Below, in pieces: positions 21,422 through 49,944 of a DNA stretch of 56,549 nucleotides. The position numbers and the translations under genes were made by a program. The notes under the pieces were generated by a model. The model saw only the letters and a program-made list of their open reading frames with translations, searched no databases and had not been told where the DNA came from. The stretch comes from Salisapilia sapeloensis CBS 127946. Lineage: Eukaryota > Protista > Oomycota. Position 1 is the first letter of the stretch. The number at the start of each line of letters is the position of its first letter. The DNA is taken from assembly GCA_023334545.1 (NCBI GenBank), contig JAADVB010000112.1, positions 1 to 56,549 on the forward strand, given 5' to 3'.

Positions 21422-24400
21422 TTACATGACGCCACAATTACCTTCTTTCCGCTCCTCCTTGGTCGATGCTGGTGAGCTTCGTGGCTGTTGTTGCTGTTGC
21501 TGGTTCTGCAGTACGTTCTTGAACTCGTAGTTCCGGCGGAGGTAGCCGAAGAGCAACGTCCTCTCTTTCTTGAGCACCTTAAGCGAATCGTCCACCACCT
21601 TCTTTAGCGCAGGATCGATCATCCGCGGGTCGTTCGTCGGTAGGTCATGTTCTTCCTGGTAGTTCATCACCTGCTCACTCGCCAGTTGGACGCGGTACGC
21701 CGCCTTGGAAACCCTCGAAGCAGCCACGTACGAAGCAGAGCCCTTGAGCGAGTGACTTTCGCGTCTCAACGTCGCGTAGTCGTTAATCTCATGCGCCTCA
21801 AAGATCTTGGCCATCACATTGCCGCAGTTGATGGCAAACTTCTCTAACAATTTCATGAACAGATCGTCCACGCCACCACATTGCTGGACACCACGTGAAA
21901 CATCCACCGGATCTCCCTCCGGAATCTCAATATCCATCGGACTAATCTTTGGTTTCGGCGTTGCTTCCTCCTTCGGACCAATCGTCGAGTTGATCTTCTC
22001 ACTCTGTGGTGCCTTGCTCTCCTCCGCAAGATTCAGCCCTTGCGGCGATTCCATCTTTCCTGCTGGATTGTACGCTGCTGCAGGAGACATCCTAGTGATA
22101 GCACTGTCGCTCATAGACCCTTTTCTCTTATCCTCTTCATCCTCCTCATCCTCTTCATCCACTTCGACTAGACCAGGGAAACGGAAGCTCTCGTTGCCGT
22201 TCGAGTGAATCGAGTCGGCCATGTCAGCGCTCTTCATCTTTCGAAGCACAGACTCACGAGGCGGCATCTCTCGCTTGAACGGCGGGTGACTCCACAGCGT
22301 CGGATCCTTCATATCGACAGTCGGTTTGACCTGGTCGTCCGCCGTCGTCGGCTGCAAGTTTCGATCCAACGTAGCAGGGAACGTCGTAGACGTCACGTCC
22401 GACTCCATCCAGTCTGGCGTCTCAATGATCGACCCATTACCATCTCGACGGAAGTTGAGAATGTCACTATTGGAAGTCGACTTGCTCGAACTGTTCGTAC
22501 CGAGACTAAAGATCGATGTAGCAGGCGCAGCAACGCGATATGTTCGTCTGTTGCCTTGGCGATTGATAGCCATCGGGTCATCCAACTCGAGATTAGAAAT
22601 GGCACGTGCTAAATCCAGCTGCTGCATGTGCTGGGACGCAGGTACCAACTTTCTCGAGTTGCTTTCAAATTTGTCCTCAAGCTGCTCGTTGTACTCGTCC
22701 ATCCCTCGGAAACTCCCTCGACGCTGCTTCTCGCTAAAGTCCGAGCTTGATCTCGAAACTTCCGGAGCAAACGTAATCGATTTCTTCGGTTTGGTTTCAG
22801 CCGAATTGGAGCCCAGGCTATGCCATTCCGCACTATAATGTTCAGGCGGGAACGCGTCGGGATCCTCATGGCGCATACAAGCAATCACACGTACGCGGAT
22901 CCATTGATGAATCGCCTTGAGCAACGTGTTCTTCGGAATGGGTTTCACCATGAACTCGTCCATGCCTGCATCGAGACACTTTTGCCGATCGCCACTCATC
23001 GCATACGCCGTGAGTCCAAGCACAGGAATGCGTGGTAGATGGTTGGTCGCCTCAAACTGACGAATGGCCGTAGCAGCAGCGTATCCGTCCATGACAGGCA
23101 TTTCGCAGTCCATAAAGATCATGTCAAAGCTCTCGTGATGAACCTTGTACGCTTCGACTGCATCTCTACCATTCACTTCCCACTGGAGCCTGTGATCTTC
23201 TTCCTGTAAGAAGCACTTGACCACTTCCCAATTGAACTCATTGTCTTCCACGACAAGGATGCTGACTTGATCCGGGATCGTGATGTCCGGGATATTCGCA
23301 CCATTCTTATTGACTTTTCCCGTGTCTGACGACACTGGTTCAAATGCCTGGTCTTGGTCCTTCGGTTCCGACTCTGGTGGTTCATCCTCGACACGGATGT
23401 TGCCGTTGTCGTTGAGCATACGCTGCGTCAGCATGTGCTTATACATCGGATCCACTTCATCATTCAGAAGGCGTACGACGACCGTGAAGAAAAAGTTACT
23501 ACCGACACTAAGCTCACTATCGACATCGATCTGACCGTCCATGAGTTCCACGAGCTGCTTACAAATAGCTAAGCCAAGACCAGACCCTGTCGGGTTATTC
23601 TGTCTTGTACGTTCGAGTTTCGTGAAGAGACTAAAGAGTCGCTGCTTTTCCTCCGCGTCCATACCGATGCCAGTATCAATGACTTGGAAGAGAAGCTTAC
23701 GGAACGTCGCGGGAAGCTCTGGCGCTCGAACCACACTGCACTTGACTGTCACGCCACCTTCATTCGTGAACTTGATGGCGTTCGACAATAGATTGAGCAG
23801 CACTTGACGCAGACGGAAGACATCTCCAATCGCATCTGACGGTACGTTCTTATCGCACTCCAATTCGAGCTTGAGACCACGATCCCGAGCTCGGAACTTG
23901 AAGATCTCGATCGAGTACTCTAGCAGGTCTTGCATTTCAAATGGTGCAGCAGAGATTTCGAGCTGCCCAGCCTCGATCTTGGACAGGTCGAGGATGTCGT
24001 TGATCAAGTTCAAGAGCAGACTACCGCTCACGTACGCCATGTTCACGTACCGCTGCGACGTTTCCTCCAGCTTGGCTTCCTTCAGCAGTTCCAGCATGCC
24101 CAAGACGCCATTCAACGGCGTCCGTAGCTCGTGACTAAAGGACGCCAAGAAGTTTACCTTGGCTGCTTCCATCTGCTTCCGCGCCGTGTAGTCCTGTCCG
24201 ACGCCAATGACGCCTCGGATGTTGCCGTGCATATCCTTCTTACTGGATGCATTCACCAGTAACAAGAGGAAGGCACCTCTCTTGGTCGTCATGGGCAGTT
24301 CCATTTCCCCGACGTCGATACCAATGAGCGCTTGATTGAGCAGTTGACGCACTTGCTTTCGACTCTCCGGGATGATAAACGTATGGACGAGAGAGAGACC

Positions 24401-27400
24401 GAGGACAGTCGATTTGTGATACCCTGTAATTTCTTCAATCTTCTGGTTCCACTCGTTGATACAGCCGTTCGTGTCGACACCAAAGATCGGGGCGTTGGCA
24501 GTATCAATAAGACGGAAGTACTCGTGCTCTTGGGCGATACGGTCAGTAATGTCCTGTCCGATGCCAACGACACCGACGATATTTCCATTCGAGTCGTTAC
24601 GTGGCGTAGCATTAAGCAGAATCTCGATGCGTGTACCAGGTCGTGTGATCAATGGGAACTCAAAGTTCGCTGTCTGGATGCCTTGCAATGCTTTCGACAG
24701 CACTTCAGCAACGATCGGTCTAAACTCTGGCGAGATAAACGTTTCCACCAGATTCTCTCCCATGACTTCCTGGATCGAGTAGTTGGTAATCTGAGCAGCC
24801 TTCTTATTCCAAATGTTCACACACATGTCTGCATCGACACCAAAGATCGGAGCATTGGCAGTGTCAATCAGTCGAGAGTACTCTTGTTCCTGCGCCAGCC
24901 TGTCCGTGATATCTTGCCCGATACCGACGACACCGACAATGTCTCCTTGCTGTCCAAACTTTGGTGTCGCATTCAACAGAATCTCCACTCGACGATTACC
25001 CTTGGTAATAAGCGGGAACTCAAAGTTTGCTGTCTCGACCCCGGACAGCGCTTGGGAAAAGACGTTGCGCACGAGGTCTCGATACTCTTCGGAAATGAAC
25101 TTGTTGATCAAGTCTTCTCCTAGCACCTCGGCGTTCGTGTACTGTGTAATGTGCGCTGCCTTGCGATTCCAAATGATCACCTTGTACTCCGAGTCGACAC
25201 CAAAGATCGGCGCGTTGGCCGTATCGATAAGACGAGAGTACTCTTGCTCTTGAGCAATGCGATCGGAGATGTCCTGTCCGATACCGACCATACCAATCAC
25301 CTGTCCATGCTCGTTGAATCGAGATGTGGCATTCAGCAAAATGTCAAGACGACGCCCGATGCGAGTAATAAGCGGGAACTCAAAGTTCGCCGTCTCCGCT
25401 CCACTCAGCGCCTTATCCAGCACAGACCCGACAGCCTCTCGGTAGTCTTCGGTGATGAATTTATCCACCAGGTTTTGTCCTAACACGTGGTCGGTAGTGT
25501 ACTGCGTAATCTCTGCAGCCTTTTTGTTCCAAATATTCACACAACCCTTCGAGTCGACACCAAAGATAGGAGCGTTAGCCGTATCAATCAGACGCGTATA
25601 CTCCTGCTCTTGGGCGATTCGATCCGTGATATCCTGTCCGATACCGACGATACCAACGATCTGTCCGTGCTGGTCGAATCGCGCAGCAGCATTCAGCAGG
25701 ATATTCAACTTGCGTTCTGTCTTGGTCATGAGCAGAATCTCAAAGTTGGATGACTCGTCACCTTGGAGAGCCTTTCGAACGACTTCATCTGCCAACGCAC
25801 GGTTCTCTTCCGCGATAAAGTTGTCTACGAGACTCTCGCCCATCACTTCTTCACGAGAGTATTGTGTAATGTGTGCAGCCTTGTTGTTCCAAATGTTCAA
25901 TCGACCGTCCATGTCGACACCAAAGATTGGAGCATTCGCCTTGTCAATGAGACGAGTGTACTCTTGTTCCTGTGCGATACGTTCGGTAATATCTTGACCG
26001 ATACCGACCATACCAATGACCTGACCATGCTCATTGTACCTAGGCGTTGCGTTCAACAGAATCTCGACACGACTACCTGCCTTGGTGATCAGCGGGAACT
26101 CAAAGTTGGCTGTTTCGAATCCAGCTAGAGCCTTGCGAAGGACAGAGCCGACAGCTTCCTTGTAGTCTTTCGTGATAAACTTGTTCACGAGGTGTTCGCC
26201 GACGACATCTCCGTTCGAGTATTGCGTAATCTCAGCAGCCTTTCGGTTCCAAATGTTCACAAGACCTTCCGAGTCGACACCAAAGATCGGAGCGTTAGCT
26301 GTGTCAATTAGACGAGTGTACTCTTGCTCCTGCGCGATGCGGTTCGTGATATCCTGACCGATGCCCACCATCCCCTTGACTCGACCATGTTCATTGTATC
26401 TCGATGTAGCATTCAGTAGAATCTCGACCCTTCGTCCTGCCTTGGTCATGAGTGGGAATTCAAAGTTCGCCGTCTCTTGACCTTCTAAAGCGTTACGAAG
26501 GACGAACCCGACGGCATCCTTGTATCCTTCTGTAATGAATTTGTTCACAAGGTGTTCGCCCATCACATCCTTGGACGTGTACTGTGTGATCTCTGCAGCC
26601 TTCCTATTCCAGATATTCACTCGGCCTTCTGCATCCACACCAAAGATCGGAGCATTGGCCGTATCAATCAGACGCGTATATTCTTGTTCCTGCGCTATTC
26701 GATCCGTGATATCTTGTCCGATACCAACCATACCAATCACTTGCCCGTGCTCATTGTATCTCGGCGTGGCATTCAGTAAGATCTCCACTCGTCTACCAGT
26801 CTTGGTCATGAGGGGGAACTCAAAGTTCGCTGTTTCTGCACCGCCTAGTGCCTTGCGGAGGACAGAACCGACTGCCTGCTTGTACCCTTCAGTGATAAAC
26901 TTGTTCACCAGGTGCTCTCCCATCACGTCGGACGGTGCGTGCTGTGTGATCTCGGCTGCCTTTCGGTTCCAAATGTTCACAAGACCTCTCGAATCGACAC
27001 CAAAGATTGGCGCATTAGCTGTATCAATAAGACGCGTATACTCCTGCTCTTGGGCGATTCGATCGGTAATGTCTTGACCGATACCGACCATACCCATCAC
27101 CTGCCCATGTTCATTGTACCTAGGCGTTGCGTTCAACAGAATCTCCAATCTACGTCCGACCTTGGTCATGAGTGGGAACTCAAAGTTGGCGGTCTCGACG
27201 TCTTCCAGCGCTTTACTTAGCACTGACGCTACTGCTTCCTTGTACCCCTCTGTAATAAACTTTTCTACGAGATTCTCCCCCATGACATCGTCATTTGTGT
27301 ACTGCGTGATCTCTGCAGCCTTCCTGTTCCAGATATTCACTCGTCCATTCGAGTCGACACCAAAGATCGGGGCGTTGGCAGTGTCTATCAAACGCGTATA

Positions 27401-30400
27401 CTCCTGTTCCTGTGCGATGCGGTCTGTAATATCCTGACCGATACCAACCATTCCTATCACTTGCCCATGCTCATTATACCTCGATGTAGCATTCAGTAGA
27501 ATCTCGACCCTTCGTCCTGCCTTGGTCATGAGTGGGAATTCAAAGTTCGCCGTCTCCTTTCCTTCCAACGCTTTGCTCAGGACGTATCCGACAGCTTCCT
27601 TGTAGTCATCCGTAATGAACTTATTCACAAGATGTTCGCCCATCACATCTTCATTCGAATATTGAGTAATCTCCGCTGCTTTGCGATTCCAAATGTTCAC
27701 AAGACCGTCTGCATCCATACCAAAGATCGGAGCATTCGCAGTGTCTATCAAACGAGTATACTCTTGTTCTTGCGCGATACGATCGGTGATATCTTGTCCG
27801 ATACCGACCATGCCTTTGACCTGTCCGTGCTCATTGTATCTCGGCGTGGCATTCAATAAGATCTCCACTCGTCTACCAGTCTTGGTCATGAGAGGGAACT
27901 CAAAGTTGGCCGTCTCCGTGCCGTTCAACGCCTTCTGAAGGACGTCTCCAACTGCCTCCTTATATCCTTCGGTAATAAACTTCTCCACCAAGTTTTCTCC
28001 CATGACATCGGATGGTGAGTGGAGTGTCACTTCGGCTGCCTTTCGATTCCAAATGTTCACACGTCCACTGGCATCCACACCAAAGATTGGCGCATTGGCC
28101 GTATCGATAAGACGTGTATACTCTTGTTCCTGTGCGATTCGATCGGTAATGTCTTGACCGATACCGACCACACCCTTCACTTCTCCTAGCTCATTATATC
28201 GTGAAGTAGCATTCAACAGAATCTCCACCCGCCTCCCTGTCTTGGTGATCAACGGGAATGCAAAGTTGGCCGTCTCGGAACCCAAGAGTGCTTTATTTAG
28301 CACAGATCCAACTGCCTGCTTGTATCCTTCCGTGATAAACTTCTCTACCAAGTGCTCGCCCATCACATCGGACGACGTATACTGCATGATCTCCGCAGCC
28401 TTCCTATTCCAGATATTCACTCGGCCTTCTGCATCCACACCAAAGATCGGAGCATTGGCCGTATCAATCAGACGCGTATACTCCTGTTCCTGCGCAATGC
28501 GATCCGTGATATCCTGACCGATACCAACCATCCCCTTGACCTCTCCAAGCTCATTATACCTCGACGTAGCATTCAGTAGAATCTCGACCCTTCGTCCTGC
28601 CTTGGTCATGAGTGGGAATTCAAAGTTCGCCGTCTCCTTCCCAGACAAAGCCTTGTCCAGGACAAAGCCCACGGCTTCCTTGTATCCTTCTGTAATGAAC
28701 TTTTCTACTAAGTTCTCTCCCATCACGTCTTTCGGTGTATACTGCGTGATTTCAGCAGCCTTTCGATTCCAGATATTCACTCGGCCGTCTTGGTCGACAC
28801 CAAAGATAGGGGCGTTGGCTGTATCAATAAGACGCGTGTACTCTTGTTCCTGCGCAATGCGATCGGTAATGTCCTGTCCGATACCGACCATGCCCTTGAC
28901 TTGTCCATGCTCGTTGAATCGAGATGTGGCATTCAGCAGAATCTCCACTCGCCTCCCAGTCTTGGTAATAAGCGGGAACTCAAAGTTGGCAGTCTCAGTA
29001 CCATCCAACGCTTTGTCCAGTACATACCCCACAGCCTTACGATAATCTTCCGTAATAAACTTTTCTACGAGATTCTCGCCCATGACATCGTCATTCGTAT
29101 ACTGCGTGATCTCGGCTGCTTTACGATTCCAGATATTCACAAGACCATCCGCATCGACACCAAAGATCGGGGCGTTCGCAGTGTCAATGAGTCGAGTAAA
29201 CTCCTGCTCTTGCGCCAGTCGTTCCGTAATGTCCTGTCCAATCCCGACGACACCGACGATCTGACCCATCTCGTTATACCTCGGTGTAGCGTTCAGCAGG
29301 ATCTCCACTCGCCGACCGGTCTTGGTCGTCAGTGGGAAGTCAAAGATAGCTGTTTGGGCGCCATCTAGAGCTTTGTTCAGCGCAGATTCCACTGCTTCTC
29401 GCGCATCTTCCGACACGAACTGCTGAACCAAGTCCTCTCCGACCACTTCGTCACCACTAAACTGCGTGATCTCGGCAGCCTTGCGGTTCCAAATCGTCAC
29501 GAGACCGTCCTTGTCGACACCAACGATAGGCGCATTCGCAGTGTCGATTAAACGAGAGTACTCTCGTTCTTGCATGATCCGGTCGGTAATGTCCTGTCCG
29601 ATACCGACAACACCGATGATCTCTCCCTGTTCATCATATCGAGGCGTCGCATTCAGTAGAATCTCCACACGTCGACCTGTGCGCGAGATAAGTGGGAACT
29701 CAAAGTTGGCTGTTTCGACGCCAACGAGTGCTTGCTCCAAGACGCCACCGACCTTCTCCTGATACTCTTTCGGAATAAAGCTTTCCACCAAGTTCGCACC
29801 GAGGACATCAAAGCCTGGATACTCTGTGATCCGAGCCGCCTTGCGATTCCAAATGTTCACAGACAAGTCTCGATCGACACCGAAGATCGGAGCATTGGCT
29901 GTGTCGATGAGACGAGTGTACTCTTGCTCCTGTGTACGTCGTTCCGTAATGTCTTGGCCGATACCGACGGCGCCGACAATGTTCCCAACATGATCCGACC
30001 GAGGCGTCGCGTTCAGCAATATAATTCGCCGCTGTCCAGATCTGGTCATGACTGGCATTTCAAAGTTCGCGGTCTCGTGTCCATCAAAGGCTTTCGATAG
30101 AATGTCAAAGAGCGCGCTCTTGAACTCATCCACGACCATGAAAGCAATGTTCTTGCCCATCATGTACTCGACAGGGTACTGTGTAATCGTCGCTGCTTTC
30201 TTATTCCAACTGGTGATCTTAAACTCCGAATCGACGCCAAAGATCGGTGCATTAGCCGTATCAATCAGACGTCGATGCTCCTGCTCTTGGATGATTCGAT
30301 CTGTAATGTCCTGGCCGATACCCACAGCGCCTGTGATGCGACCTAAGTGGTCAAACCATGGCGTGATGTTCAATAGCACTTCAAAGCGCTTTCCGCTCTT

Positions 30401-32102: not shown

Positions 32103-35100
32103 TCATCGTGTGTGCGGTCGAGTATAGAAATCATTGTAATTGAGTTGCTGGACAAGTTCGCTGACACCAGCAACCGCGCCCGTGGATTCCATGCTTGCAA
32201 GTATCCCCACTAGAAATCGTGCCTGACGAGAAAAATCATTTCCAATCGCATCCACTTCCCGAGCATCTTTCCACCAAGATGCATGTACATCACTAGCCTC
32301 TACATCACAATGCCGATCTAATGCATCCAAATATGTGTCGCAAACGCGTAGGAAGTGAAGGGATCGGTTCAAAGGTCCAAGGATATGGCGACGTAGTTGC
32401 TCATGCTAGCGACAAAACCGACATCAGCAGAGCATAATAGGACACACTACATAGGTGTCTACCTTGTCTAGCAGAAAGCTGTCGCACAGTAGCCGATTGA
32501 GATAGGCGTTATGCTCTTCATCCATCTACAAGCACGATAAAGAGTTCGTACGGAATGACAAAAGTAGATAAGAGGAAGGAGACTACAGACAGCAGCGAGA
32601 GAGGATGCATGGTGGATCTTGTCAAGTGTCTGCTGCCAGGACGGATGATCAATCTGTGATCGAAGGTAGGTCAAGAGTGACTTGACAAAGTGAAGCATCT
32701 CGTGCACGATCGCAAGAGGCTTTTGGACTTGCTTCGTCAATCTACACACATCCCATCTGGTTACAAGATCTTCACAAATGAGTCTTTAGTAAGTCAACGT
32801 ACATGGCAAAGCAGCGTCGTCGCCGAAGAGAGTGCTGGAACTATGCAATGCAGAAAAGGATCATGTAATTGAAGACTAGCTAGCTGTATAGATGGAGTGC
32901 ATACCTGAACGAGGCTTGCCTCCACTGCTTTGACTTGCAGAAGCTGAACGCTAAGGCAAGAATATTTTTGCATGACTTCTGGTCCAAGCAACGTTCGGAG
33001 TGACGGCGTCGAAGCGACTGTAAAATGTAGACATTCAAAGGCGCCCACATCGCTTTCTATACTCTTTGTCTGTTGCACCATCTTGGTCACATCCACTCGC
33101 AACGCAATTTCTTCTGCTATCTTTTCCTGTGTGTCACTCATGACATTCCTTTCGGCTTCCACATCTAGTATAATATCATGGTAGATAGCATCGAGCATTT
33201 CGCTTTTCGCCCATCGTGCTGTAGGAGACGCTATCTCTTGCAGCAGCCGACGACTAAATAAGCTTAAAACATCTTGCTAAAAAGCGTAGAAGGTGATTAT
33301 TGATACTTAGTAGATGAGTACTAGAGGAAAGAAGTACCTGTTGGAAGAGAACGAATGTACGTAAGGCATCCAGGTAGTCTGCATAGCCCAATTCATGAAG
33401 GAATCGATGGACGATGGTGGCATGTAGACCTGAAGAAATGCTTTGGATGGGCGCTAGTAGTGCCTTTTGCATCATTATCGTCACTGGCGTACGCATCCCA
33501 CTATATCGACAGTGTGTCACTACGCTGGCAAATGAGCTCTTCAAGGTACTTTGGTACGCATTACTCTCGTACACGTGCATTGTATGCAGTAAGGACTTAT
33601 TTCCGAATGCTTCTTTTAAAGTCGATCCGACTTCAGACATGACTTTTGGCAGATGCTCTGTTTGCATCTCATAGTCACCACTGGAAGCTCGTTCAACTCC
33701 TTGTCTGTCCTTGTACATTTCTGTACGTTTTGCAAGTAAAGAGTCATTTTCGTCTGCATTTTGAAAGATCTCAACGCGTAGATCAAAGCACAAGCGATCC
33801 AGCATCTCCAGGAATGGTTCCAACGAGCCTTGAAAAAGGTCCAACAGGACGTTATAATCGTTCCATTCACCCTCCAAGTCACTCGACTGGGATCCTGACA
33901 TCTTCAATGCTGTATACAGCTCATCGACAATTGTTTTATCAACGACAGTAGCCTCTATCTCTGTCAAGTTTTGCTTCGATAGGGATTGAAAGACGTGGTG
34001 AATTGTGGCTTGAAGCCACACAACAAAACGAAAGGCTGGACGGAGGTGAATACGTGCACCAAGTAATGTCGGAAGAAGAACATTTTCTGAATCCTCCTCC
34101 TCATCTAGCATCTCCCGCTGAAGAACATGGATCTGTGACTGGATGGTAGTGGCCATTTGCTGCAAGGTATGGCCAAGACCCTCCCACACTACACTTTTGC
34201 TGTCGTTATGTAGTGTATGCGTTCTGGACAGGTTCGTAAAATCTCGTAAGAACTGGAAGCTGGAGATCGGAGGTAAAAAGAAGTTTAGTAAGCTACTAAG
34301 ACTTCCACTGGACAGATGAGAGAGACCAACAGTATCACAAAGGTACACACTCGTCATGGTAAAATCACCCTCAAACATCGTGTCGGACGATCGCTCAAAC
34401 GCGATGGGAGTAGTAGGAATACCGTTTAGAGCGCTAAATACTGCTAGTACTACATCACGCTCCGCAAGAACTTTTGTGGGTGCTTTTGAAAAGGACAAAG
34501 TACGCGTCACCTGGATATTTAGGTCGTTTGGCTCATCGAGTGCAAACGGTGGGTGATCACTCCTGGTTATAGACATTTCCTCTATCTCGTAGCTGTTTTC
34601 GGTAAGACCTGAAGAGTAGGCTGGATAAGCTACTTTGAGCTCTTGTTCTTGGTCTCTTTCATCTGCATCGCTTAAGTATTCGTCGATACTATCCATATCG
34701 CCTTCATGACTGCTGAAGCTGTCTTCGTTAATCGGATAAAGTGTCGGTTCGCCACTGACATCGGACCATTCGCTCCAGTCGTCCATATCATCCTCTTCAT
34801 TCCAAGCATTACGCCACTCTTCATCGACTGCAATTGCAACAAGTTCATTTTTCAGTCGATCTTCTTCCGTCTCGCTTGAATTAATTTCTTCCTCCACCTC
34901 TTCATAATTGTTTTCATGAAAGATCAAGTCTTCTGTAGCGGGTTCTGTCACCTCAAGCAATAATTTGGTGAGATTATAGTCACATACTTCAGCGAGTTCA
35001 AGTAGACGACTCGCTTCCTTCTCCATTCCATGTAGACGCCATTTGCGACCAATACCATGGACTTCATCCTTGACGTCCTGTGGCGTCGAATCAAGATATT

Positions 35101-35227
35101 TGTTATTGTAGACAGCTGCCAATGCCTCATCAACTTTGTCTTCATCATTCACTTCCAATTGAGTGCACAAAGTCGATACAAGAGGTCCCCAATGACGCTC
35201 AGCCCATGCCGGCGTCGCTCTTGACAT
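32103..35227 (-). CDS. TUBGCP5: Gamma-tubulin complex component, GCP5-like (Spc97/Spc98 family), multi-exon
   Basis: N-terminal NKYLD...VHGIGRKWRLHG and the acidic insert with EEWR/DWS resemble GCP5; LAERDVVLAVFSAL precedes the GRIP1 region; ends with the GCP-type LVQQLNYNDFY. Exon ORFs: 33254-35260, 32794-33198, 32468-32749, 32103-32372. Confidence 0.75.
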
Positions 35228-42619: not shown

Positions 42620-42676
42620 TCACAAGGAGGAGAGCACTTCGATATAAGTTACGCAGCAGGCTTCCCGTAATACGAG

Positions 42677-43475
42677 ATGGAGGGGTACGACCACTTGTTC
42701 AAGCTACTGCTCATCGGCGATGCTGGTGTCGGGAAAAGCAGGTAGAACGATTTCTTGGACCATCTTACTCCAGCTTCAATTCTTTCGAATACAGTTTCGC
42801 TTATTCCCTCCGATTAACTCGTTATATATTAACACAGTATGCTGCTACGCTTCACAGATGATACGTTTGAAGACAACTTACAGAGCACCATTGGTACGTC
42901 CTCATCCCAGCACTGTACAAAGTCCAATACTCAACCATGAATAGGAGTCGACTTCAAGGTGAAAATGATGGAGGTGGAAAAGAAGCGGATTAAAATGACG
43001 CTGTGGGACACTGCCGGGCAAGAGCGTTTCCGGACGCTCACCAGCTCTTACTATCGTGGCGCCCAAGGCATCGTGCTCGTCTATGACGTTGCCCGTCGAG
43101 ACACGTTCGAAAGTCTCGACTTGTGGTTACAAGAAGTGGAAGTCTACTCGCCTGCAAGTGGCCGTGAAGTCGTTAAACTACTCGTTGGCAACAAAATCGA
43201 CAAGGTACGCATATTGCTTTGCACACGTACAACTGTGTCTAACGCACGAATAGGAACGTGTGGTAAGTCGAAAGGAAGGCGAAGACTGGGCTCGATCCAA
43301 AGGCATGCTGTTTTTGGAAAGCAGTGCTAAGACACGTATTGGTATCCAGCAAGTTTTTAATGAAGTCGTGGAAAAGATTTTGGAGAATCCCAACCTCTTG
43401 GCCAACACCGTGCCCCGAGGTAGTCGACAGCTGCATCATCAGACACCCAATGCAAAAGGTAGTGGGTGTTGCTAG
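42677..43475 (+). CDS. RAB18: Rab18 GTPase, 4 exons
   Basis: [71 protein letters not shown] and C-terminal CC. Confidence 0.93.
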
Positions 43476-43579
43476 ATTATGTCGCTTGTCGTTGGAACCT
43501 TTCGTAGGTAGAGATGTAGACCAAGGAGCAATACGAAAAACATTCCATTTGAAAGCAAAAGTACCGGATTCGAGAAAAA

Positions 43580-44005
43580 TTATTCGCCATTGCTCCGACC
43601 TCGAATGCGTCGAGCGAGTTGCATGTCCTTGACCATCAACGTCACGCGCTTGCCATGGATGGCACATAAATTGCTACAGGTCAAATGAGCTTTGGTCAGG
43701 CGTAATATATACGTAATAACGTACGCGTCTTCGAAGAGCCGAGTCAAGTAGACTTCTGCCGCTTCCTGGAGCGCCATGAGCGCCTCTGCTTGCCAGCGAT
43801 ATGGTTGGGAAGCATAAAGCATCTGCAGCTCCCGCACCAATCGAGCAAACGGGAGCTTTCGAATAAGCAGGTCCGTCGTGCGCTGGAAGTAGCGGATCTC
43901 CCGCAAGGCCTTCATGCCAGGACGGTATCGTCGCTGGTTGGACCGCGGTGCAACAGGCGCCTGGACCGACCGCCGCGTCGTCGACGGCTTCCGTCGAGCA
44001 GACAT
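43580..44005 (-). CDS. CENPA: Centromeric histone H3 variant (CenH3/CENP-A)
   Basis: H3 histone fold with CenH3 diagnostics: Q68 to A (LPFARLVRE), F84 to W (RWQAEAL), T107 to A after splicing intron 43674-43724 (EDA|NLCAIH), a one-residue loop-1 insertion and a non-canonical N-tail. Confidence 0.88.
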
Positions 44006-44367
44006 CGGTGTCGCGATGTTGGTATGAAAAGTCGAATTCTAAGAAAAAGAAAGGAAAGAAAAGAGAACCCTTCAACTGACGTCCGTTTGTTCCGACTTGA
44101 ATTGGGTATGGTCGTTGTCGACCATCAGACCCTATCGCACGAACGCCATCCTCCCCGTCCATCACCGTGGTGTCGTCAGTAATTCACTTACGACATTGAG
44201 AGAAGTAGCTACCTCTTCAAGTAGTATACACGTCGGGGCTAACATCTCTGAAATTCGAAACAAGTAGGTCGGATTAATAGCAAGCCGCAGCTTCTTTTCT
44301 ATTTTCAAGTGACGCCAGTTTGTTCTCCGGCCTGACTTGCAATCCTTCTACGCACAAACACAAGAGC

Positions 44368-47300
44368 ATGGACTATGCCCTGGAAGAAGCTTGTGTTCCA
44401 GCCTTTTGCCTCACCGAAGATGGACAGGTCTCGCTCTGGAATAGAGCACTAGCACAGCTTACTGGCACCGACACGAAGGTAGTGGTAGGACGGCCACTCG
44501 AAGAACTTGTGCACCAAGACAGCACTGGAGATGTGCATCGGTACATCCGCGACCTACATTCCTCACCCCACAAGCCTCTCGAGAATGCTCGCCTCGAGTT
44601 CGTCCACTGCCGCACGGGAGCTTTGATCACACTACGGACGAATATGACGGCATCCTTGACGTTTGAGGATCGTGTCGACCGAATCGTCGCGATATGTGAT
44701 GTCTTACGATGCGTACGACCACTATCGGTCTCCCACGATTCGATCGACCTCCCTTCTTCCCCGATAATACCAGCAGCGAGCGACGATGAGAAACGATCTA
44801 TCAACGATCTACCTGAACTTGATGTGAGCAGCACTCCTCCATCCCGACAAGAAGCTCCAAACAATAATCGTTCTCGAAATGATCACATTGGCTTTCGTAG
44901 TGAACGTAGAGGTAGTATGCAAAGTGATGCCGAGTCGACCACATCTTCCTGCAAGATGTCGCCGTACGGAAAGGCGCTCATGGCTGCCAACGTACCTGTC
45001 TTTGAGCTCGACCACGACGCTCGTATCATGGTCTGGAACGCGAAAACCGCTTCTCTCACAGGCTTCAGTTCCGAAGGTGTGGTGGGTCAGTTGCTCACCG
45101 ACACGGTAGACGCATCTTCCAAAGACCGCTTCCAACACGCCTTCCAGACTGCTGTTGACACGCAGCGTGCTGGAGACGAGTTCGAGGTCTGTTTCACTGC
45201 GAATGACGGTAGCCACGCCGAAGTCATGCTGTCACTCTCGCCACAAGTAGATGATGACGGGCGAGTCATTGGCGTCATGGCGATCGGACAAGACGTCAAG
45301 CACCAGTCGAGCAACGATAGCAGTATGATCAACACGGCGAACGCTCCGATCTTTGGGATTGATATTGAAGGCCGGATCGTCATTTTTAATAAGAAAGCTT
45401 CGAAAGTCACCGAGTTTTCGCCGGAGGAAGTGCTAGGCTGCAATCTCATCGAGACCTTGGCGCAAGGAAGTGTACGTGAAGCTGTCGCGAACGTCTTTGA
45501 TGCAGCTGTGAAAGGCCAGGCGACGGCTAACTTTGAGTTCCCACTCGCGACACGAAGTGGTAAGCGGATAAGTATCCTTCTGAATGTAACGCCTCGATAC
45601 GACCATCACGGACGTGTGATTGGTGCTGTGGGGATCGGCCAGGACATCACGGAACGAGTGGTGCAGGAAGAAGAACTCCGTCGACTCATCTACACTGCCA
45701 ATGCGCCTATCGTCGGTGTTGATAAAGACTATAAGATCAACATTTGGAATCGAAAAGCGACGACTATTACAGAGTATAACAGTGATGAAGCCATTGGCTA
45801 TCAGCTGACAGAGTTCCTGCCGGAAGGACATAAAGAAAGCGTCCAGCATGTCTTCCAACAAGCACTGGAAGAAGCAAAGGAGACGGCGCGATTCGAGTTT
45901 CCGCTTGTGACAAAAGAAGGACGAGAGCTCAAGATCCTGTTGAACGCAACGCCGAGGTTTGACCATAAAGGACGTATCATCGGTGTCGTCGGCATCGGAC
46001 ATGACTTTACAGACTTGAAAGCGCAGGAGCAAGAATATGCTCGCTTGATCGAGACGGCGAATGCGCCTATCTTTGGCGTCGATGTAGACTTTTCCATTAC
46101 GATTTGGAATCGAAAAGCTGCTGAAGTCACAGGGTACTCTGCAGAAGAAGCGTTGGGGACAGACTTGATCCAGGAGTTCATTCCGGATGAATATAAAGTA
46201 CAAGTCCGTGGCGTTCTATCTCTCGCATTGGATGGAGAGGAGACGGCGAACTTTGAGTTTCCGTTGGTCACGAGAGGGGGAAGGAGGGTTGAAGTGCTAT
46301 TGAATGCGACGCCAAGATATGATGAGCGACAGAATATTATCGGAGTGGTCGGTATTGGACAAGATATTACAGCTCGAATCGCTCAAGAGCAAGAGTACAG
46401 GAGACTCATCGATACTGCCAACGCTCCGATCTTCGGTGTCGATCAAGATGGACTTGTCACTATCTGGAATAACAAAGCAGCAGAGATTACACAGTACACG
46501 AATGAGGATGTCATGGGCGAACACCTCGTGAATAAGTTCATCACAGATGACTACAAGGAAGCAGTGGCGTCCGTCTTGAGCAAGGCGTTGGAAGGCACAG
46601 AGACCGCTAACTTTGAGTTCCCACTTATGACAAAAGGAGGGCGTAGGGTCGAGATCCTGCTGAACGCTACGCCGAGGTATAATGAGCATGGGCAAGTGAT
46701 AGGAATGGTTGGTATCGGTCAGGATATTACCGACCGCATCGCACAGGAGCAAGAGCATATGAAGCTAATTGAGAATGCCAATGCTCCTATCTTTGGTGTG
46801 AACGTTGATGGTTTCGTGACGATTTGGAACCAGAAGATGGCGGATATTACGCAATACACCAAGGTCGAGGCCATCGGCAAGTACTTTGTCAACAGTTTTG
46901 TCGAACCGACGTACCGTGGTATCCTCGCGGACGTCTTATCGGATGCCCAACGATCCGCTTTTGCTGCTTCAAATGTTGAGATCGTCTTGACGACCAAGAC
47001 TGGCAGGCGAGCGAATATCTTGATGAATGCAACCGTACGCTTTGGACAGCATGGAGAAGTGGAAGGTGTCGTTGGTATCGGACAAGACATTACCGATCGA
47101 CTAGCGCAAGAGCAGGAATACACTCGTCTTATCGATACAGCCAACGCTCCAATCTTTGGTGTGGACGACAAAGGTCTGGTGACGATTTGGAATAAGAAAG
47201 CAGCGCAGTTGACACAGTACAAGACACGAGAAGTCGTGGGTCAGAACCTCGTCGAGACGTTTGTGTCGCCCAAGCACCGACCAGCCGTGAAGCAAGTGTT

Positions 47301-49944
47301 TGCCAAGGCACTCGAAGGTATCCAAACGGCAAACTTTGACTTTCCATTGATCACCAAGTCTGGTACACGAGTGGATGTTTTGCTGAATGCAACACCAAGG
47401 AATGATCCGCATGGAAATATCGTCGGCGTCGTGGGCATCGGTCAGGATATCACCGATAGGATTGCTCAGGAGCACGAGTACTACCGTCTGATCGACAGTG
47501 CGAATGCTCCGATTTTTGGTGTCGATCCTTTTGGTTGTGTGAATGAATGGAATCAGAAGATTGGACAATTGACTGGGTATGCGAAGAAAGATGTGGTGGG
47601 AGAATCACTCGTCGAACGCTTCGTGGCGCAGGATTCAGCCGATCAAGTGTGGAAACAACTACGACAGGCACTTATCGGTATTGATGTTGGCGAGATGGAG
47701 CTGCCGATCCATACCAAGAGCGGTCGGTCGCTCTTATTGCTTGTGAACGCGTCTAGTAAGATGGACTTGAGTGGAAATATTGTTGGTGTCATTGGCGTCG
47801 GACAGGACTACACGGCAAAGAAACGGATGGAGGCTGCGAGAGTCAACTTCCTCGCTTCCTTTAGTCATGAGTTACGCACACCGTTAAATGGCGTGCTTGG
47901 TATGCTCGAGTTGATTCGAAACGATACGTTGGAGAGAAAGACACGCAAGAGATACGTGGACATGGCGTACATCAGCGGCAGTCTCCTCTTGAATCTTATA
48001 AACGATATCCTGGATTTGTCCAAGATCGAAGCTGGTCACATGGAAATCAACTATGATCCATTCCATCTAGATGATCTACTCTCGTACGTCATTGAGCTGT
48101 TCAAGTTCAAGGCAAAAGAAAAGAAAATTGATCTAGTGCTCGAAGCAGGTGACCTTCCTCATGCACTCATTGGAGACGTTGGTAGGCTGCGTCAGATTCT
48201 ACTCAACTTTTTATCCAACGCCATTAAGTTTACAAAGAAAGGAAGTATTACAGTGAAGTGTCATACGGTATCAGCAACGGATGTGCCACCAGAGAAGAAG
48301 AGATTTCTGTTCGAAGTGGTGGATACGGGCATCGGCATGACCTCAGAGGAAATGGCGCATCTCTTTGAAATCTTTTTCAAAGTTAACAGTATGAAGAAGG
48401 ATAACCCGACTGGATCTGGACTTGGTCTTGCCATTTGTAAGCAGTTGGTCGAGCTCATGGGTGGACAGATTGGCGTCGAGAGCGAAAAATTTGTAGGTAG
48501 TAACTTTTACTTCATCGTGGACTTGGAAGTGGCCAATGAAGAGAGCACATCATCCTTGTTCCGACCGGAGAATGCCGACACGAAGCCTGCCATCCACCGA
48601 GCTGTATCTGACGATCTCCATGCAAGCGTCCTTGTCGTGGAGGACAATGACTTTAACTGGGAAATCGTATGTGCTTTCCTCTGCAACAACGGCGAAGACC
48701 ATTTCGTCCGGTGGGAAGCGAATGGTCAGGCAGCACTTGAAGCGTATAAGAAGCACCACGAGTGCTTCGATCTTGTGCTCATGGACTGCGAAATGCCTGT
48801 CATGGACGGCTACAACGCCACACGATCCATCCGTAAGTATGAAAAAGATAATGGTCTTCCGAGGATGCCAGTCTTAGGTCTCACTGCCTACGCCATGCAC
48901 GGGGATCGGCAAAAGTGTCTGGATGCAGGTATGGATGAGTTCCTGGTGAAGCCGATCGGTCAAACAACTCTCCTTCAAGCCATCCACACTTGGAAAGGCA
49001 AGAAGAGAACTACGCGCGGCTTGATAGATCGAATGGCGGCTGGGCTTCAACGAGCGTCACAGTACCAACAGCATATAACGATCGATAAAGCAATCTCTGC
49101 TCTCGAGCTGGAAGATCCCAGCCGAGTTGCAAAGCATGGAGATACGCTCATGATCGCGCATGAACCTTCAGGCATTCCGACGACAGGCTCGTTGTACTCA
49201 TCCGAAGGAAGTGACAGTAGGTCCCAATACCAAGACTCAGATCTTTCCAGGTCGAGATCGTGGACTCAGATCGGGTCTCGATCTCTTCCTGCTGGATGCA
49301 AATTCCCTTTTAAAGATGCGCATGGCAACGTTGGCACGAGCACGATGCCTGCTTCAGAGATAAAGGTACAGAACTCTAGTCGTTCCAGGCGTCATACGTT
49401 CTTCCCTTACCTATCCAAATCTCAGGGTGTGAATCAGATCAAGGAGGGTATTGAAGAGAATGAGCCGGACCCTCCGTTGCCTGTTATGCTTGCTGTCAAT
49501 CCACTTGATAGTGTCGTTCTTCCCGACGGAGATCCGATCAACTTTGCAAAGGGTGTGTCCCAATGTGGAGGCAAAGAACCCCTCTTTATGACGTTCTTGG
49601 AGAATTATAATCGTCAAGTAGGAGGCAAAATGGCTCAGATCCAAAATGCCTTCGAACAGAAAGACTGGCAGACAGTCAAGTCGACTAGTCATTCACTCAA
49701 AGGCATGTCGGCCTATGCAGCCGCAGAGCGTGTGGAGAAGAGCGCCCAACGACTAGAACTGGCATCGACAAGACTCATGTCTTCTTTAGAGCAAGTGGGA
49801 TCGGTGGAGAGAGAGATGCGGTTGCTCCGGGACGAGTACGAGCATTTGAAAGGATACTTAAGACGAAATTTCGAGTTTGGGGCGCCGGAAACGAAAAAGA
49901 AGGTGGATCAAAAGGACGATGGCTTTGCATGCGCGCTGATGTGA
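44368..49944 (+). CDS. HK2: soluble hybrid histidine kinase, 9 PAS - HisKA - HATPase_c - receiver - HPt, C-terminal CaaX; paralog of HK1
   Basis: SFSHELRTPLNG, NFLSNAIKFT, DTGIGM, GSGLGLAIC, LVLMDCEMPVMDG, and HPt STSHSLKGMSAY; first ATG at 44368; 9 PAS units counted. Confidence 0.95.
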   Translation: MDYALEEACVPAFCLTEDGQVSLWNRALAQLTGTDTKVVVGRPLEELVHQDSTGDVHRYIRDLHSSPHKPLENARLEFVHCRTGALITLRTNMTASLTFEDRVDRIVAICDVLRCVRPLSVSHDSIDLPSSPIIPAASDDEKRSINDLPELDVSSTPPSRQEAPNNNRSRNDHIGFRSERRGSMQSDAESTTSSCKMSPYGKALMAANVPVFELDHDARIMVWNAKTASLTGFSSEGVVGQLLTDTVDASSKDRFQHAFQTAVDTQRAGDEFEVCFTANDGSHAEVMLSLSPQVDDDGRVIGVMAIGQDVKHQSSNDSSMINTANAPIFGIDIEGRIVIFNKKASKVTEFSPEEVLGCNLIETLAQGSVREAVANVFDAAVKGQATANFEFPLATRSGKRISILLNVTPRYDHHGRVIGAVGIGQDITERVVQEEELRRLIYTANAPIVGVDKDYKINIWNRKATTITEYNSDEAIGYQLTEFLPEGHKESVQHVFQQALEEAKETARFEFPLVTKEGRELKILLNATPRFDHKGRIIGVVGIGHDFTDLKAQEQEYARLIETANAPIFGVDVDFSITIWNRKAAEVTGYSAEEALGTDLIQEFIPDEYKVQVRGVLSLALDGEETANFEFPLVTRGGRRVEVLLNATPRYDERQNIIGVVGIGQDITARIAQEQEYRRLIDTANAPIFGVDQDGLVTIWNNKAAEITQYTNEDVMGEHLVNKFITDDYKEAVASVLSKALEGTETANFEFPLMTKGGRRVEILLNATPRYNEHGQVIGMVGIGQDITDRIAQEQEHMKLIENANAPIFGVNVDGFVTIWNQKMADITQYTKVEAIGKYFVNSFVEPTYRGILADVLSDAQRSAFAASNVEIVLTTKTGRRANILMNATVRFGQHGEVEGVVGIGQDITDRLAQEQEYTRLIDTANAPIFGVDDKGLVTIWNKKAAQLTQYKTREVVGQNLVETFVSPKHRPAVKQVFAKALEGIQTANFDFPLITKSGTRVDVLLNATPRNDPHGNIVGVVGIGQDITDRIAQEHEYYRLIDSANAPIFGVDPFGCVNEWNQKIGQLTGYAKKDVVGESLVERFVAQDSADQVWKQLRQALIGIDVGEMELPIHTKSGRSLLLLVNASSKMDLSGNIVGVIGVGQDYTAKKRMEAARVNFLASFSHELRTPLNGVLGMLELIRNDTLERKTRKRYVDMAYISGSLLLNLINDILDLSKIEAGHMEINYDPFHLDDLLSYVIELFKFKAKEKKIDLVLEAGDLPHALIGDVGRLRQILLNFLSNAIKFTKKGSITVKCHTVSATDVPPEKKRFLFEVVDTGIGMTSEEMAHLFEIFFKVNSMKKDNPTGSGLGLAICKQLVELMGGQIGVESEKFVGSNFYFIVDLEVANEESTSSLFRPENADTKPAIHRAVSDDLHASVLVVEDNDFNWEIVCAFLCNNGEDHFVRWEANGQAALEAYKKHHECFDLVLMDCEMPVMDGYNATRSIRKYEKDNGLPRMPVLGLTAYAMHGDRQKCLDAGMDEFLVKPIGQTTLLQAIHTWKGKKRTTRGLIDRMAAGLQRASQYQQHITIDKAISALELEDPSRVAKHGDTLMIAHEPSGIPTTGSLYSSEGSDSRSQYQDSDLSRSRSWTQIGSRSLPAGCKFPFKDAHGNVGTSTMPASEIKVQNSSRSRRHTFFPYLSKSQGVNQIKEGIEENEPDPPLPVMLAVNPLDSVVLPDGDPINFAKGVSQCGGKEPLFMTFLENYNRQVGGKMAQIQNAFEQKDWQTVKSTSHSLKGMSAYAAAERVEKSAQRLELASTRLMSSLEQVGSVEREMRLLRDEYEHLKGYLRRNFEFGAPETKKKVDQKDDGFACALM
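45320..47820 (+). repeat. Coding tandem repeat of PAS units 3-9 in HK2 (360/363-nt spacing)
   Basis: NAP codons start at 45340, 45700, 46060, 46420, 46780, 47143 and 47503. Confidence 0.93.

What the first reader, a model, noticed from the sequence alone, without database searches (positions are those of the whole stretch)
21422..49944. Candidate system: a pair of soluble, self-contained phosphorelay kinases with accordion-like PAS arrays
Seen: two paralogs in inverted (head-to-head) orientation about 13 kb apart, each PAS(n)-HisKA-HATPase-REC-HPt with the phospho-His, Asp and HPt His intact, no TM helix, and n = 20 versus 9. Established: eukaryotic phosphorelays (fungal Sln1-Ypd1, plant AHK-AHP) normally use a separate HPt protein, whereas built-in HPt is typical of bacterial unorthodox kinases such as ArcB and BvgS. 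Inference: a one-polypeptide His-Asp-His relay tuned by PAS copy number. Multi-PAS hybrid kinases are annotated in oomycete genomes, so novelty would lie in the mechanism and the combined features, not necessarily in the family.
Basis: partly seen in the sequence, partly recalled or inferred. Interest (0 to 1): 0.8.

Follow-up and report, generated by a model that had tools for sequence, protein, structure and literature searches.

The report
Two oomycete multi-PAS histidine kinases

Summary
HK-A (21422-31456, minus strand, 3344 aa) and HK-B (44368-49944, plus strand, 1858 aa) lie head-to-head, 12.9 kb apart. Each is PAS(n)-HisKA-HATPase-REC-linker-HPt, with n = 20 and 9. The catalytic His, Asp and HPt His are intact and there is no TM helix.

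The 20-unit array is very unlikely to be an assembly artefact:
- Synonymous sites between units are saturated (pS about 0.73) and dN/dS is about 0.06.
- Every unit sits at single-copy depth in a DNA run.
- RNA runs from another study hold the same sequence.

The family is not new. Judelson & Ah-Fong 2010 described clustered, TM-less oomycete HKs with 10-21 PAS. Kabbara 2019 described the fused HPt. Qiu 2023 linked a P. sojae member to zoospore chemotaxis. Public orthologues carry 17 to 30 units (one representative has 33), so 20 is ordinary.

- 88 of 92 family members end in C-x-x-M, so the kinases are probably lipid-anchored, not soluble.
- The 120-aa register is invariant.
- Copy number tends to change in three-unit blocks.
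- Synteny places both genes.
- Six unrelated genes separate the pair, so it is a linked paralogue pair, not a co-regulated unit.

The downstream receiver is unknown. The scan's earlier notes cover this window only; nothing was found on other DNA. Verdict: a new member of a known kind.

The parts
21422..31456 (-). HK-A coding sequence, 3344 aa, uninterrupted ORF (stop at 21422-21424)
   Evidence: RNA and DNA contigs are collinear with no gaps
24191..31384 (-). HK-A PAS array: 20 units in a strict 120-aa (360-nt) register; unit 4 is 119 aa
25190..29710 (-). Core of the array, detectable as a DNA tandem repeat (period 360, 12.6 copies, 73% matches); holds units A07-A15 and A17, which are 77-90% identical in protein but 71-83% in DNA
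23966..24160 (-). HK-A HisKA (DHp); H-box SHELRTP at 24116-24136, phospho-acceptor His2442
23480..23827 (-). HK-A HATPase_c with N, G1 and G2 boxes
22910..23260 (-). HK-A receiver (REC); Asp2783 within 23096-23116, Lys in VKPI at 22937-22948
21890..22909 (-). HK-A REC-HPt linker, 340 aa, rich in Ser/Glu/Pro/Asp, with an acidic EED run (9-nt repeat at 22125-22165)
21476..21889 (-). HK-A HPt domain, predicted four-helix bundle; HSLKG at 21740-21754, His3235
21425..21436 (-). HK-A C-terminal CaaX box CGVM (predicted farnesylation site)
44368..49944 (+). HK-B coding sequence from the first ATG, 1858 aa (the mechanical ORF opens at TTG 44320)
   Evidence: RNA runs hold 100% of its sampled words
44368..47808 (+). 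HK-B PAS array: 9 units, with a Ser-rich insert between units 1 and 2; unit 6 (46366-46725) is 90% identical to A11
47839..48036 (+). HK-B HisKA; H-box at 47863-47883, His1167 (ATG numbering)
48172..48528 (+). HK-B HATPase_c
48628..48984 (+). HK-B receiver; Asp1473 within 48778-48798
49555..49887 (+). HK-B HPt; HSLKG at 49690-49704, His1775
49930..49941 (+). HK-B C-terminal CaaX box CALM
18517..21300 (+). RGS-DENN gene, tail-to-tail with HK-A. It is a synteny anchor: the same neighbour follows the HK1 orthologue in Peronospora belbahrii and Phytophthora ramorum
42959..43475 (+). Rab/Ras-type small GTPase (two ORF pieces) just upstream of HK-B on the same strand. It is a synteny anchor: an Arf/Ras/Roc-type GTPase lies in the same place before Pe. 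belbahrii HK2

Best explanation
HK-A and HK-B are two paralogous members of the oomycete-specific family of cytoplasmic multi-PAS 'unorthodox' hybrid histidine kinases. HK-A belongs to the HK1/HK3 clade and HK-B is the positional orthologue of HK2.

Inferred mechanism: each protein acts as a dimer. An N-terminal rod of PAS domains is joined by short helices of fixed length; every unit is a 15-residue N-cap helix plus a PAS core that ends in GIGQD-IT. This rod controls autophosphorylation of the H-box His. The phosphoryl group then passes to the built-in receiver Asp and, across a long disordered linker, to the His of the C-terminal HPt four-helix bundle. The HPt is followed by a short tail that ends in a conserved C-x-x-M box, so the output end is most likely farnesylated and held at a membrane rather than free in the cytosol. 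From there the phosphoryl group would go to a separate receiver-domain protein that is not encoded in this window.

The arrays grew by duplication of inner units, often three at a time, between fixed terminal units. The copies are old and each is kept under strong purifying selection.

Shown here: domain order, intact residues, the reality, age and constraint of the units, transcription, orthology and synteny, and conservation of the CaaX box. Inferred: dimeric rod, direction of phosphotransfer, farnesylation, and the nature of input and output.
For: - Architecture and residues.
- No TM helix.
- HPt: the family profile hits only HPt proteins in the PDB, with the His aligned. The AF2 model is a four-helix bundle (pLDDT 88.6) and its best fold matches are HPt domains: 3myf, 8pbw, 7c1i, AHP1, ArcB, Ypd1.
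- PAS unit: the AF2 model of three units has pLDDT 84, each unit being an N-cap helix plus a PAS fold. The best fold matches are multi-PAS sensors: DosP, PpsR, LOV-PAS-HK and FixL.
- Array is real and old: protein identity is 77-90% against DNA identity of 71-83%. pS averages 0.73, dN is 0.06-0.16 and dN/dS is about 0.06. DNA-run unitigs are 100% identical at depth 35-49, against 41-44 in the flanks. RNA runs from another study hold 95-100% of the words, with a 3'>5' depth gradient. A related organism carries the array at about 96-97% identity, with differences mostly spaced by multiples of three.
- Family: the best hits are all oomycete HKs. In the tree, winA falls inside the HK1/HK3 clade with 96/90 support.
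- Synteny: RGS-DENN and Ank-HECT lie next to HK1, and a Rab GTPase lies before HK2.
- CaaX: 88 of 92 members end in CxxM, with a variable a1 residue and variable preceding tails; 0 of 51 bacterial hits do.
- Literature: PMC3019232, PMC6324907, and PMC10072465 (a knock-out of a P. sojae member abolishes zoospore chemotaxis).
Against: - No single contig or read spans the array. The order of the units rests on the assembly, and only their number and single-copy depth are independently supported.
- Farnesylation is inferred from sequence alone.
- The inter-domain geometry of the PAS model is uncertain (pTM 0.49), so the 'rod' is an inference.
- No ligand or cofactor can be named; no Cys or His is conserved in the helical part of the units.
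- HK-B sits on a very long branch (1.96 against a median of 0.09) and may have changed function.
- The tree does not resolve whether HK-A is closer to HK1 or HK3; only synteny favours HK1.
- No receiver partner is known.
Confidence: 0.85

Rival explanations
1. One reading: two soluble, self-contained His-Asp-His relays that form one system, with gain or specificity set by PAS copy number.
For: Domain order and intact residues. No TM helix. Copy number differs between paralogues and lineages: 7, 9, 10, 17 and 20-30.
Against: The CaaX box is conserved. An HPt normally hands on to another receiver. Six unrelated genes lie between the two kinases, and orientation and spacing are not conserved. Copy number is 17 in 8 of the 9 complete Peronosporaceae HK1 models, which does not look like tuning.
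Confidence: 0.15
2. The 20-unit array is an assembly artefact, that is, spurious expansion or mis-joining of a shorter array.
For: Logan contigs break inside the core (25.3-28.9 kb) wherever units share words of 31 nt or more, and nothing spans the array.
Against: The units differ at 17-29% of bases and synonymous sites are saturated, so reads place uniquely. Each unitig is at single-copy depth. RNA assemblies from another study hold the same unitigs. The 'joints' reported come from laying a truncated reference: the 27 'between' letters are the genome's own next bases. Orthologues with 17-30 units exist in long-read assemblies.
Confidence: 0.03
3. The PAS array is not a sensor but a spacer or scaffold: a stiff rod of set length, or a platform for partner proteins. 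Regulation would come from elsewhere.
For: The 120-aa register and linker are invariant in all orthologues. The core units are near-identical in protein yet each is under purifying selection. There is no conserved cofactor-binding Cys or His. The closest solved relative is the cofactor-less PAS-A of plant phytochromes.
Against: The closest sequence relatives are PAS domains of ordinary bacterial sensor kinases that also carry CHASE, HAMP or KaiC modules. The GQD-IT junction before each helix is the usual signal-passing joint of PAS sensors (from my own knowledge of PAS-kinase linkers, not tested here). Variable positions cluster in the helical, pocket-lining part of the units.
Confidence: 0.25
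4. HK-B is a decaying or neofunctionalised copy that no longer works as a kinase relay.
For: Very long branch. The kinase core is only 54-62% identical to its orthologues, against 72-74% for HK-A. The related organism shares far fewer of its words.
Against: The 5.6-kb ORF is intact and all catalytic motifs, the HPt His and the CaaX box are kept. RNA runs hold 100% of its words. A micro gene-conversion patch is shared with HK-A.
Confidence: 0.1

Closest known systems
Oomycete multi-PAS hybrid histidine kinases: the three P. infestans HKs of Judelson & Ah-Fong 2010 (PMC3019232), the two Albugo laibachii HKs of Kabbara et al. 2019 (PMC6324907), and P. sojae Ps130388 of Qiu et al. 2023 (PMC10072465)
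   Same: Tandem N-terminal PAS array, HisKA-HATPase-REC, fused C-terminal HPt, no TM helix and clustered paralogues. The 120-aa unit register and the CxxM end are shared with all orthologues examined. Tree and synteny place both genes in this family.
   Different: 20 and 9 units here, against 17, 10 and 24-30 in Peronosporaceae, 9 and 26 in Pythium, and 7 in Saprolegniales. Both proteins sit on long branches, HK-B extremely so. Only two paralogues lie in this window; whether the genome has a third is unknown. The papers I read (PMC3019232, PMC6324907, PMC10072465) do not mention the CaaX box, the fixed register or the three-unit steps.
Bacterial unorthodox (tripartite) sensor kinases such as ArcB, BvgS, TorS, BarA/GacS
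   Same: The same order of transmitter, receiver and HPt on one chain, and the same HPt fold and His motif. The kinase core is most similar to hybrid kinases of this kind, including the RetS/GacS type.
   Different: No TM or periplasmic sensor, no adjacent cognate response regulator, a eukaryotic gene context, a 190-340 aa disordered REC-HPt linker, a CaaX end and far longer PAS arrays.
PAS-A/PAS-B repeat module of plant phytochromes (phyB 7rzw, phyA 8f5z)
   Same: It is the closest solved structure to the unit profile (domain E 1.7e-25, against 4e-9 for the next non-phytochrome). No cofactor is known for it.
   Different: Pfam finds no PAS-GAF-PHY photosensory core here. PAS domains of prokaryote-type kinases score higher per unit, about 140 bits against 92, so the phytochrome match reflects what has been crystallised, not nearest kinship.
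Physarum polycephalum PpolyHK5/HK18 (HPt fused to REC; PMC6324907)
   Same: A eukaryotic hybrid kinase with a built-in HPt.
   Different: Not compared by sequence here. A different supergroup, and no multi-PAS array is reported for them.

Membership tests
Oomycete multi-PAS HK-REC-HPt kinases | [quoted passage not shown] | tested here: met
   20 and 9 units by Pfam and by a unit HMM. HK-B has 9, as its Pythium orthologue does.
Oomycete multi-PAS HK-REC-HPt kinases | HisKA with H-box His, HATPase with N/G1/G2 boxes, and a receiver with the acceptor Asp on the same chain | tested here: met
Oomycete multi-PAS HK-REC-HPt kinases | HPt domain fused C-terminal to the receiver | tested here: met
   Pfam Hpt scores above cutoff (27.4 and 39.3 bits). 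Profile hits in the PDB are HPt proteins only. The model is a four-helix bundle.
Oomycete multi-PAS HK-REC-HPt kinases | No transmembrane segment | tested here: met
   Maximum hydropathy 1.2
Oomycete multi-PAS HK-REC-HPt kinases | Common descent with named oomycete members | tested here: met
   All top hits are oomycete. winA is inside the HK1/3 clade at 96/90 support. winB is inside the oomycete clade at 100/100 but its position there is unresolved. Synteny supports both.
Oomycete multi-PAS HK-REC-HPt kinases | His-to-Asp-to-His phosphotransfer | not testable with these tools
   Needs biochemistry
Bacterial unorthodox kinases (ArcB/BvgS type) | Transmitter-receiver-HPt order on one polypeptide | tested here: met
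Bacterial unorthodox kinases (ArcB/BvgS type) | Membrane-spanning N-terminus and/or periplasmic sensor | tested here: not met
Bacterial unorthodox kinases (ArcB/BvgS type) | Cognate response regulator encoded next to the kinase | tested here: not met
   None of the 15 ORFs I scanned with Pfam in the window has a receiver domain; that set covers every sizeable ORF in the 12.9-kb gap between the two kinases
Plant-type phytochromes | PAS-GAF-PHY photosensory core | tested here: not met
   No GAF or PHY match in either protein
CaaX-prenylated proteins | Cys at -4, an aliphatic residue at -2, and Met (or Ser/Gln/Ala) at the C-terminus | tested here: met
   CGVM and CALM here. 88 of 92 relatives end in CxxM, and position -2 is V, I or L in all but one.
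CaaX-prenylated proteins | A farnesyl group actually attached | not testable with these tools
   Needs labelling or mass spectrometry

The most novel reading that the evidence does not exclude
Oomycete multi-PAS kinases would be the first histidine kinases anchored to a membrane by a C-terminal farnesyl group instead of a TM helix. The lipid would sit right behind the HPt domain. The phosphorelay output would then be delivered at a membrane, for instance that of the zoospore, where one family member is needed for chemotaxis. The PAS array would project tens of nanometres into the cytoplasm as a rod of quantised length that lengthens or shortens in three-unit steps.
Probability: 0.4. Interest if true: 0.6.

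Novelty: new member of a known kind. Interest (0 to 1): 0.35.

Why it matters
The family is the main, perhaps the only, two-component input of oomycetes, a group that includes major crop and animal pathogens. Animals lack histidine kinases altogether and plants have no kinases of this multi-PAS type, so it has been suggested as a control target (PMC6324907). One member is needed for zoospore chemotaxis and full virulence in P. sojae (PMC10072465).

This window adds no new kind of system.
- A near-universal CaaX box predicts where the relay ends in the cell, and it is easy to test.
- The fixed 120-aa register and old, individually constrained units argue that every PAS copy matters.
- Copy-number differences of three units, including between P. 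ramorum assemblies, give natural variants for testing what array length does.

Tried and rejected
- Assembly artefact: rejected on unit divergence, single-copy depth and independent RNA assemblies. The odd 'joints' were traced to the truncated reference.
- Special kinship of the PAS units with plant phytochromes: the PDB profile search pointed there. A search of 1.84 billion representatives followed by Pfam scans showed closer PAS units in prokaryote-type kinases with CHASE, HAMP, KaiC or TPR modules, so it was dropped as an origin claim.
- The pair as a co-regulated divergent unit: rejected, because six unrelated genes lie between the two and the arrangement differs in Pe. belbahrii.
- MAPKK-like kinase tail-to-tail with HK-B as a functional link: in Pe. 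belbahrii none of the four called genes in the 6 kb downstream of HK2 is a protein kinase.
- Looking up HK-B by exact sequence in public assemblies: not on record, and the run names are coded, so the organism could not be named. Both proteins sit on long branches among oomycete kinases.
- Three-unit periodicity inside this window's array: not visible at protein level. At DNA level it is weak (mean identity at lag 3 about 79%, against about 75% at lags 1 and 2). Four of the six pairs with the lowest pS are 3 or 6 units apart. It is far clearer in P. cactorum.
- Literature searches for CaaX or farnesylation of oomycete HKs found nothing relevant. The library lacks most subscription journals, so this is weak evidence of novelty.
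- I ran no further search on receiver domains, because bacterial CheY-like hits would have swamped it.
Full report
**What is there.**
The region holds two very long uninterrupted ORFs.
- HK-A: 21422-31456, minus strand, 3344 aa.
- HK-B: ORF 44320-49944, plus strand. The first ATG is at 44368, giving 1858 aa.

Pfam finds 20 PAS stretches in HK-A and 9 in HK-B. Each array is followed by HisKA, HATPase_c, Response_reg and Hpt. The translations and motif positions show these features:
- The H-box SHELRTP: A His2442; B His1167 in ATG numbering.
- The N, G1 and G2 boxes of the ATPase.
- The receiver Asp in F/LMDCEMP: A Asp2783; B Asp1473.
- The receiver Lys.
- The HPt motif HSLKG: A His3235; B His1775.

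The highest 19-residue hydropathy mean is 1.2, so no TM helix is predicted. The genes are head-to-head, 12,911 nt apart.

**The HPt call is sound.**
An alignment of the C-terminal region from 12 family members has an invariant H-x-L-K-G. As a profile it matches only HPt proteins in the PDB, with the His aligned to the phospho-His of MtHPt1. AlphaFold2 gives a four-helix bundle (pLDDT 88.6, pTM 0.79). Its best fold matches are HPt domains: the Shewanella hybrid kinase 3myf, the C. thermophilum HPt, HptB, AHP1, ArcB and Ypd1. The E-values are weak, as usual for helical bundles.

**The array is real.**
All units from the third onward are exactly 120 aa long, except unit 4 at 119 aa. TRF sees a 360-nt period over 25190-29710 with only 73% matches.

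Core units A07-A15 and A17 are 77-90% identical in protein but only 71-83% identical in DNA. Nei-Gojobori counts on 55 core pairs give these values:

| Measure | Value |
|---|---|
| mean pS | 0.73 (saturation is 0.75) |
| dN | 0.06-0.16 |
| median dN/dS | about 0.06 |

Units this different cannot be confused or multiplied by an assembler.

In a DNA run the unitigs of the array are 100% identical to the window. They sit at depth 35-49, against 41-44 in the unique flanks. RNA runs from a different study hold 95% of the HK-A words and 100% of the HK-B words, with a 3'>5' depth gradient along HK-A. A related organism carries the array at about 96-97% identity, with differences mostly spaced by multiples of three.

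No contig spans the whole array, so the order of units still rests on the assembly. The 'joints' are an effect of laying a truncated reference: the 'between' letters are simply the next bases of the genome.

On this saturated background there are in-register runs of 30-86 identical bases:
- A09/A14: 86 nt.
- A11/A14: 77 nt.
- A08/A11: 74 nt.
- A11/B06: 53 nt, at 46673-46725.

These are best read as short gene-conversion tracts, one of them between the two genes.

**What the unit looks like.**
An AlphaFold2 model of three consecutive units has pLDDT 84 and pTM 0.49. Each unit is a 15-16-residue N-terminal helix followed by a canonical PAS fold. The best fold matches are multi-PAS sensors: DosP, PpsR, Brucella LOV-PAS-HK and FixL. 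The relative placement of the units is not reliable.

Across the 28 units aligned from both proteins, three parts are conserved: the first two strands (ANAPIxGxD, WN), the last strand and the junction GIGQD-IT. Variable positions cluster in the helical part. No Cys or His is conserved there, so there is no LOV-type or FixL-type cofactor signature.

The closest solved structure is the PAS-A domain of plant phytochromes (domain E 1.7e-25; the next non-phytochrome is at 4e-9). A profile search of 1.84 billion representatives, followed by Pfam scans, found higher-scoring PAS units in prokaryote-type kinases with CHASE, HAMP, KaiC or TPR modules. This fits the bacterial origin proposed in PMC3019232 and PMC10468136. 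The kinase core is most similar to ordinary hybrid kinases.

**It belongs to a described family.**
All strong hits are oomycete proteins. The published record is as follows:
- Judelson & Ah-Fong 2010 (PMC3019232). [quoted passage not shown] The genes lie in one or two clusters. The proteins have kinase and receiver domains but no TM domain. The tandem PAS arrays have 10, 15 and 21 units in P. infestans and up to 20 in P. ramorum.
- Kabbara et al. 2019 (PMC6324907). The two Albugo laibachii HKs have multiple PAS repeats and an HPt fused to the receiver.
- Xing et al. 2023 (PMC10468136). Phytophthora kinases have more than 14 PAS domains.
- Qiu et al. 2023 (PMC10072465). Knocking out the P. sojae member Ps130388 abolished zoospore chemotaxis to daidzein and lowered virulence.

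**Unit counts in orthologues.**
Counts were made with an HMM of the window's units.

| Lineage / paralogue | PAS units |
|---|---|
| Saprolegniales, HK2 type | 7 |
| Pythium, HK2 type | 9 |
| Peronosporales, HK2 type | 10 |
| Peronosporaceae, HK1 type | 17 in 8 of 9 complete models (2886-2988 aa); 16 in an older P. ramorum model |
| Third class, HK3 (3270-4488 aa) | 20-30 |

One representative in the large library has 33 stretches. Twenty units are therefore ordinary for this family.

**Orthology.**
A tree of the kinase core plus receiver puts HK-A inside the clade that holds HK1 and HK3 (96/90 support). HK-A falls outside the Peronosporaceae-specific HK1/HK3 split. HK-B lies inside the oomycete clade, but on a very long branch and without a resolved position.

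Synteny settles more:
- HK1 in Pe. belbahrii and P. ramorum is followed tail-to-tail by an RGS-DENN gene, as HK-A is here.
- P. ramorum also has the Ank-HECT gene nearby.
- HK2 in Pe. belbahrii is preceded by a small GTPase on the same strand, with an MMR_HSR1 GTPase and an ankyrin gene further up, as HK-B is here.

In Pe. belbahrii the two kinases lie on one 57-kb contig, 29 kb apart and convergent. Linkage is therefore old, but orientation and spacing are not fixed.

In this window six unrelated genes lie between the two kinases: a gamma-tubulin complex protein, an ankyrin protein, a GTPase, a ConA-like lectin-domain protein, a Rab-type GTPase and a histone H3 variant. I see no basis for calling the pair one functional system.

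**How the arrays changed.**
The last two units are highly conserved. A20 is 96% identical to unit 17 of P. cactorum HK1, and A19 is 89% identical to unit 16. The first four units also correspond by position. The inner units are more alike within a species than between species.

In P. cactorum the inner units form a clear three-unit super-repeat (units 9, 12 and 15; 10 and 13; 11 and 14, at 93-95% identity). HK-A differs from the 17-unit orthologues by three units. P. ramorum assemblies differ by three units in HK3, 26 against 29. In this window the lowest-pS pairs are mostly 3 or 6 units apart. 'Accordion' is a fair picture over evolutionary time, in steps that are often three units. The near-constant 17 units of Peronosporaceae HK1 argues against rapid tuning.

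**The point that changes the reading.**
Both proteins end in a CaaX box (CGVM and CALM). Of 92 oomycete-type kinases with an HPt His in my two hit sets, 88 end in C-x-x-M. The first 'a' residue is variable, and the preceding tails vary in sequence and length. Three of the four exceptions (P0028, P0063, P0064) run 220-290 residues past the HPt His, and two of these carry Ras/Arf domains there, so they look like faulty gene models. The fourth (P0086) is not evidently oomycete. None of 51 bacterial hits ends in CxxX.

A C-terminal Met with an aliphatic residue at -2 is the classic farnesyltransferase signal (my own knowledge). The kinases are therefore probably lipid-anchored through the end that carries the HPt, not soluble. 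Two literature searches found no mention of this, but the library is incomplete. A separate note of this scan (s1-296288) had flagged the two boxes. I had seen them independently and tested their conservation here.

**Output.**
An HPt is an intermediate carrier. None of the 15 ORFs I scanned with Pfam in the window has a receiver domain, and that set covers every sizeable ORF between the two kinases. Unchecked notes of this scan list receiver-fusion proteins elsewhere in the genome, including receiver-NEK kinase and receiver-hydrolase-IQ-SAM. These are leads for the acceptor, and I could not test them. 'Self-contained' is thus unproven.

**Verdict.**
This is a new member of a known kind. The family, its giant PAS arrays, the lack of TM, the gene clustering and the fused HPt are all published.

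Noticed in passing
window 43580-44005 (-): A histone H3-fold protein of 141 aa with a divergent N-terminal tail (Pfam Histone, 113.6 bits) lies head-to-head with HK-B. It may be a centromeric H3 variant. A Histone hit also occurs in a gene model upstream of HK2 in Pe. belbahrii (L001 700-3010).
   Followed up: partly
window 42959-43475 (+): A Rab/Ras-type small GTPase is split over two ORFs, which implies a short intron or frame change. It ends in GCC, a double-Cys prenylation end. The same kind of gene precedes HK2 in Pe. belbahrii.
   Followed up: partly
window 46673-46725 and 27431-27483 (unit A11); also A09/A14, A11/A14, A08/A11: In-register runs of 53-86 identical bases occur between PAS units whose synonymous sites are otherwise saturated. 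These look like short gene-conversion tracts, one of them between the two genes, which lie about 19 kb apart.
   Followed up: yes
P0143/P0144 vs P0145 (P. ramorum); P0130-P0134 vs P0135-P0138 (P. fragariae): Assemblies of one species differ in HK3 unit number: 26 against 29 in P. ramorum (exactly 360 aa) and 21 against 25-26 in P. fragariae. This is either real polymorphism or collapsed assemblies.
   Followed up: partly
P0159 (representative library): A 4799-aa protein with 33 matches to the PAS-unit profile, the longest array seen here. Its source is unknown.
   Followed up: no
window 50036-51915 (-): A Ser/Thr protein kinase in two ORF pieces ends 91 nt from the HK-B stop, tail-to-tail. In Pe. 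belbahrii none of the four called genes in the 6 kb downstream of HK2 is a protein kinase, so this looks like chance adjacency.
   Followed up: partly
window 32794-35260 (-): The gamma-tubulin complex protein is split into an N-terminal-domain ORF (33254-35260) and a C-terminal-domain ORF (32794-33198), so genes here carry short introns. The two 5.6- and 10-kb kinase genes have none.
   Followed up: no
window 10155-14180 (+) and 18517-21300 (+): Ankyrin + HECT ligase and RGS-DENN genes keep their neighbourhood with the HK1 orthologue as far as P. ramorum (L003). This is a conserved micro-syntenic block.
   Followed up: partly
runs X6-X9 (organism B): A close relative shares 8-23% of HK-A words but only 5-7% of HK-B words. 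This fits faster evolution of HK-B.
   Followed up: no
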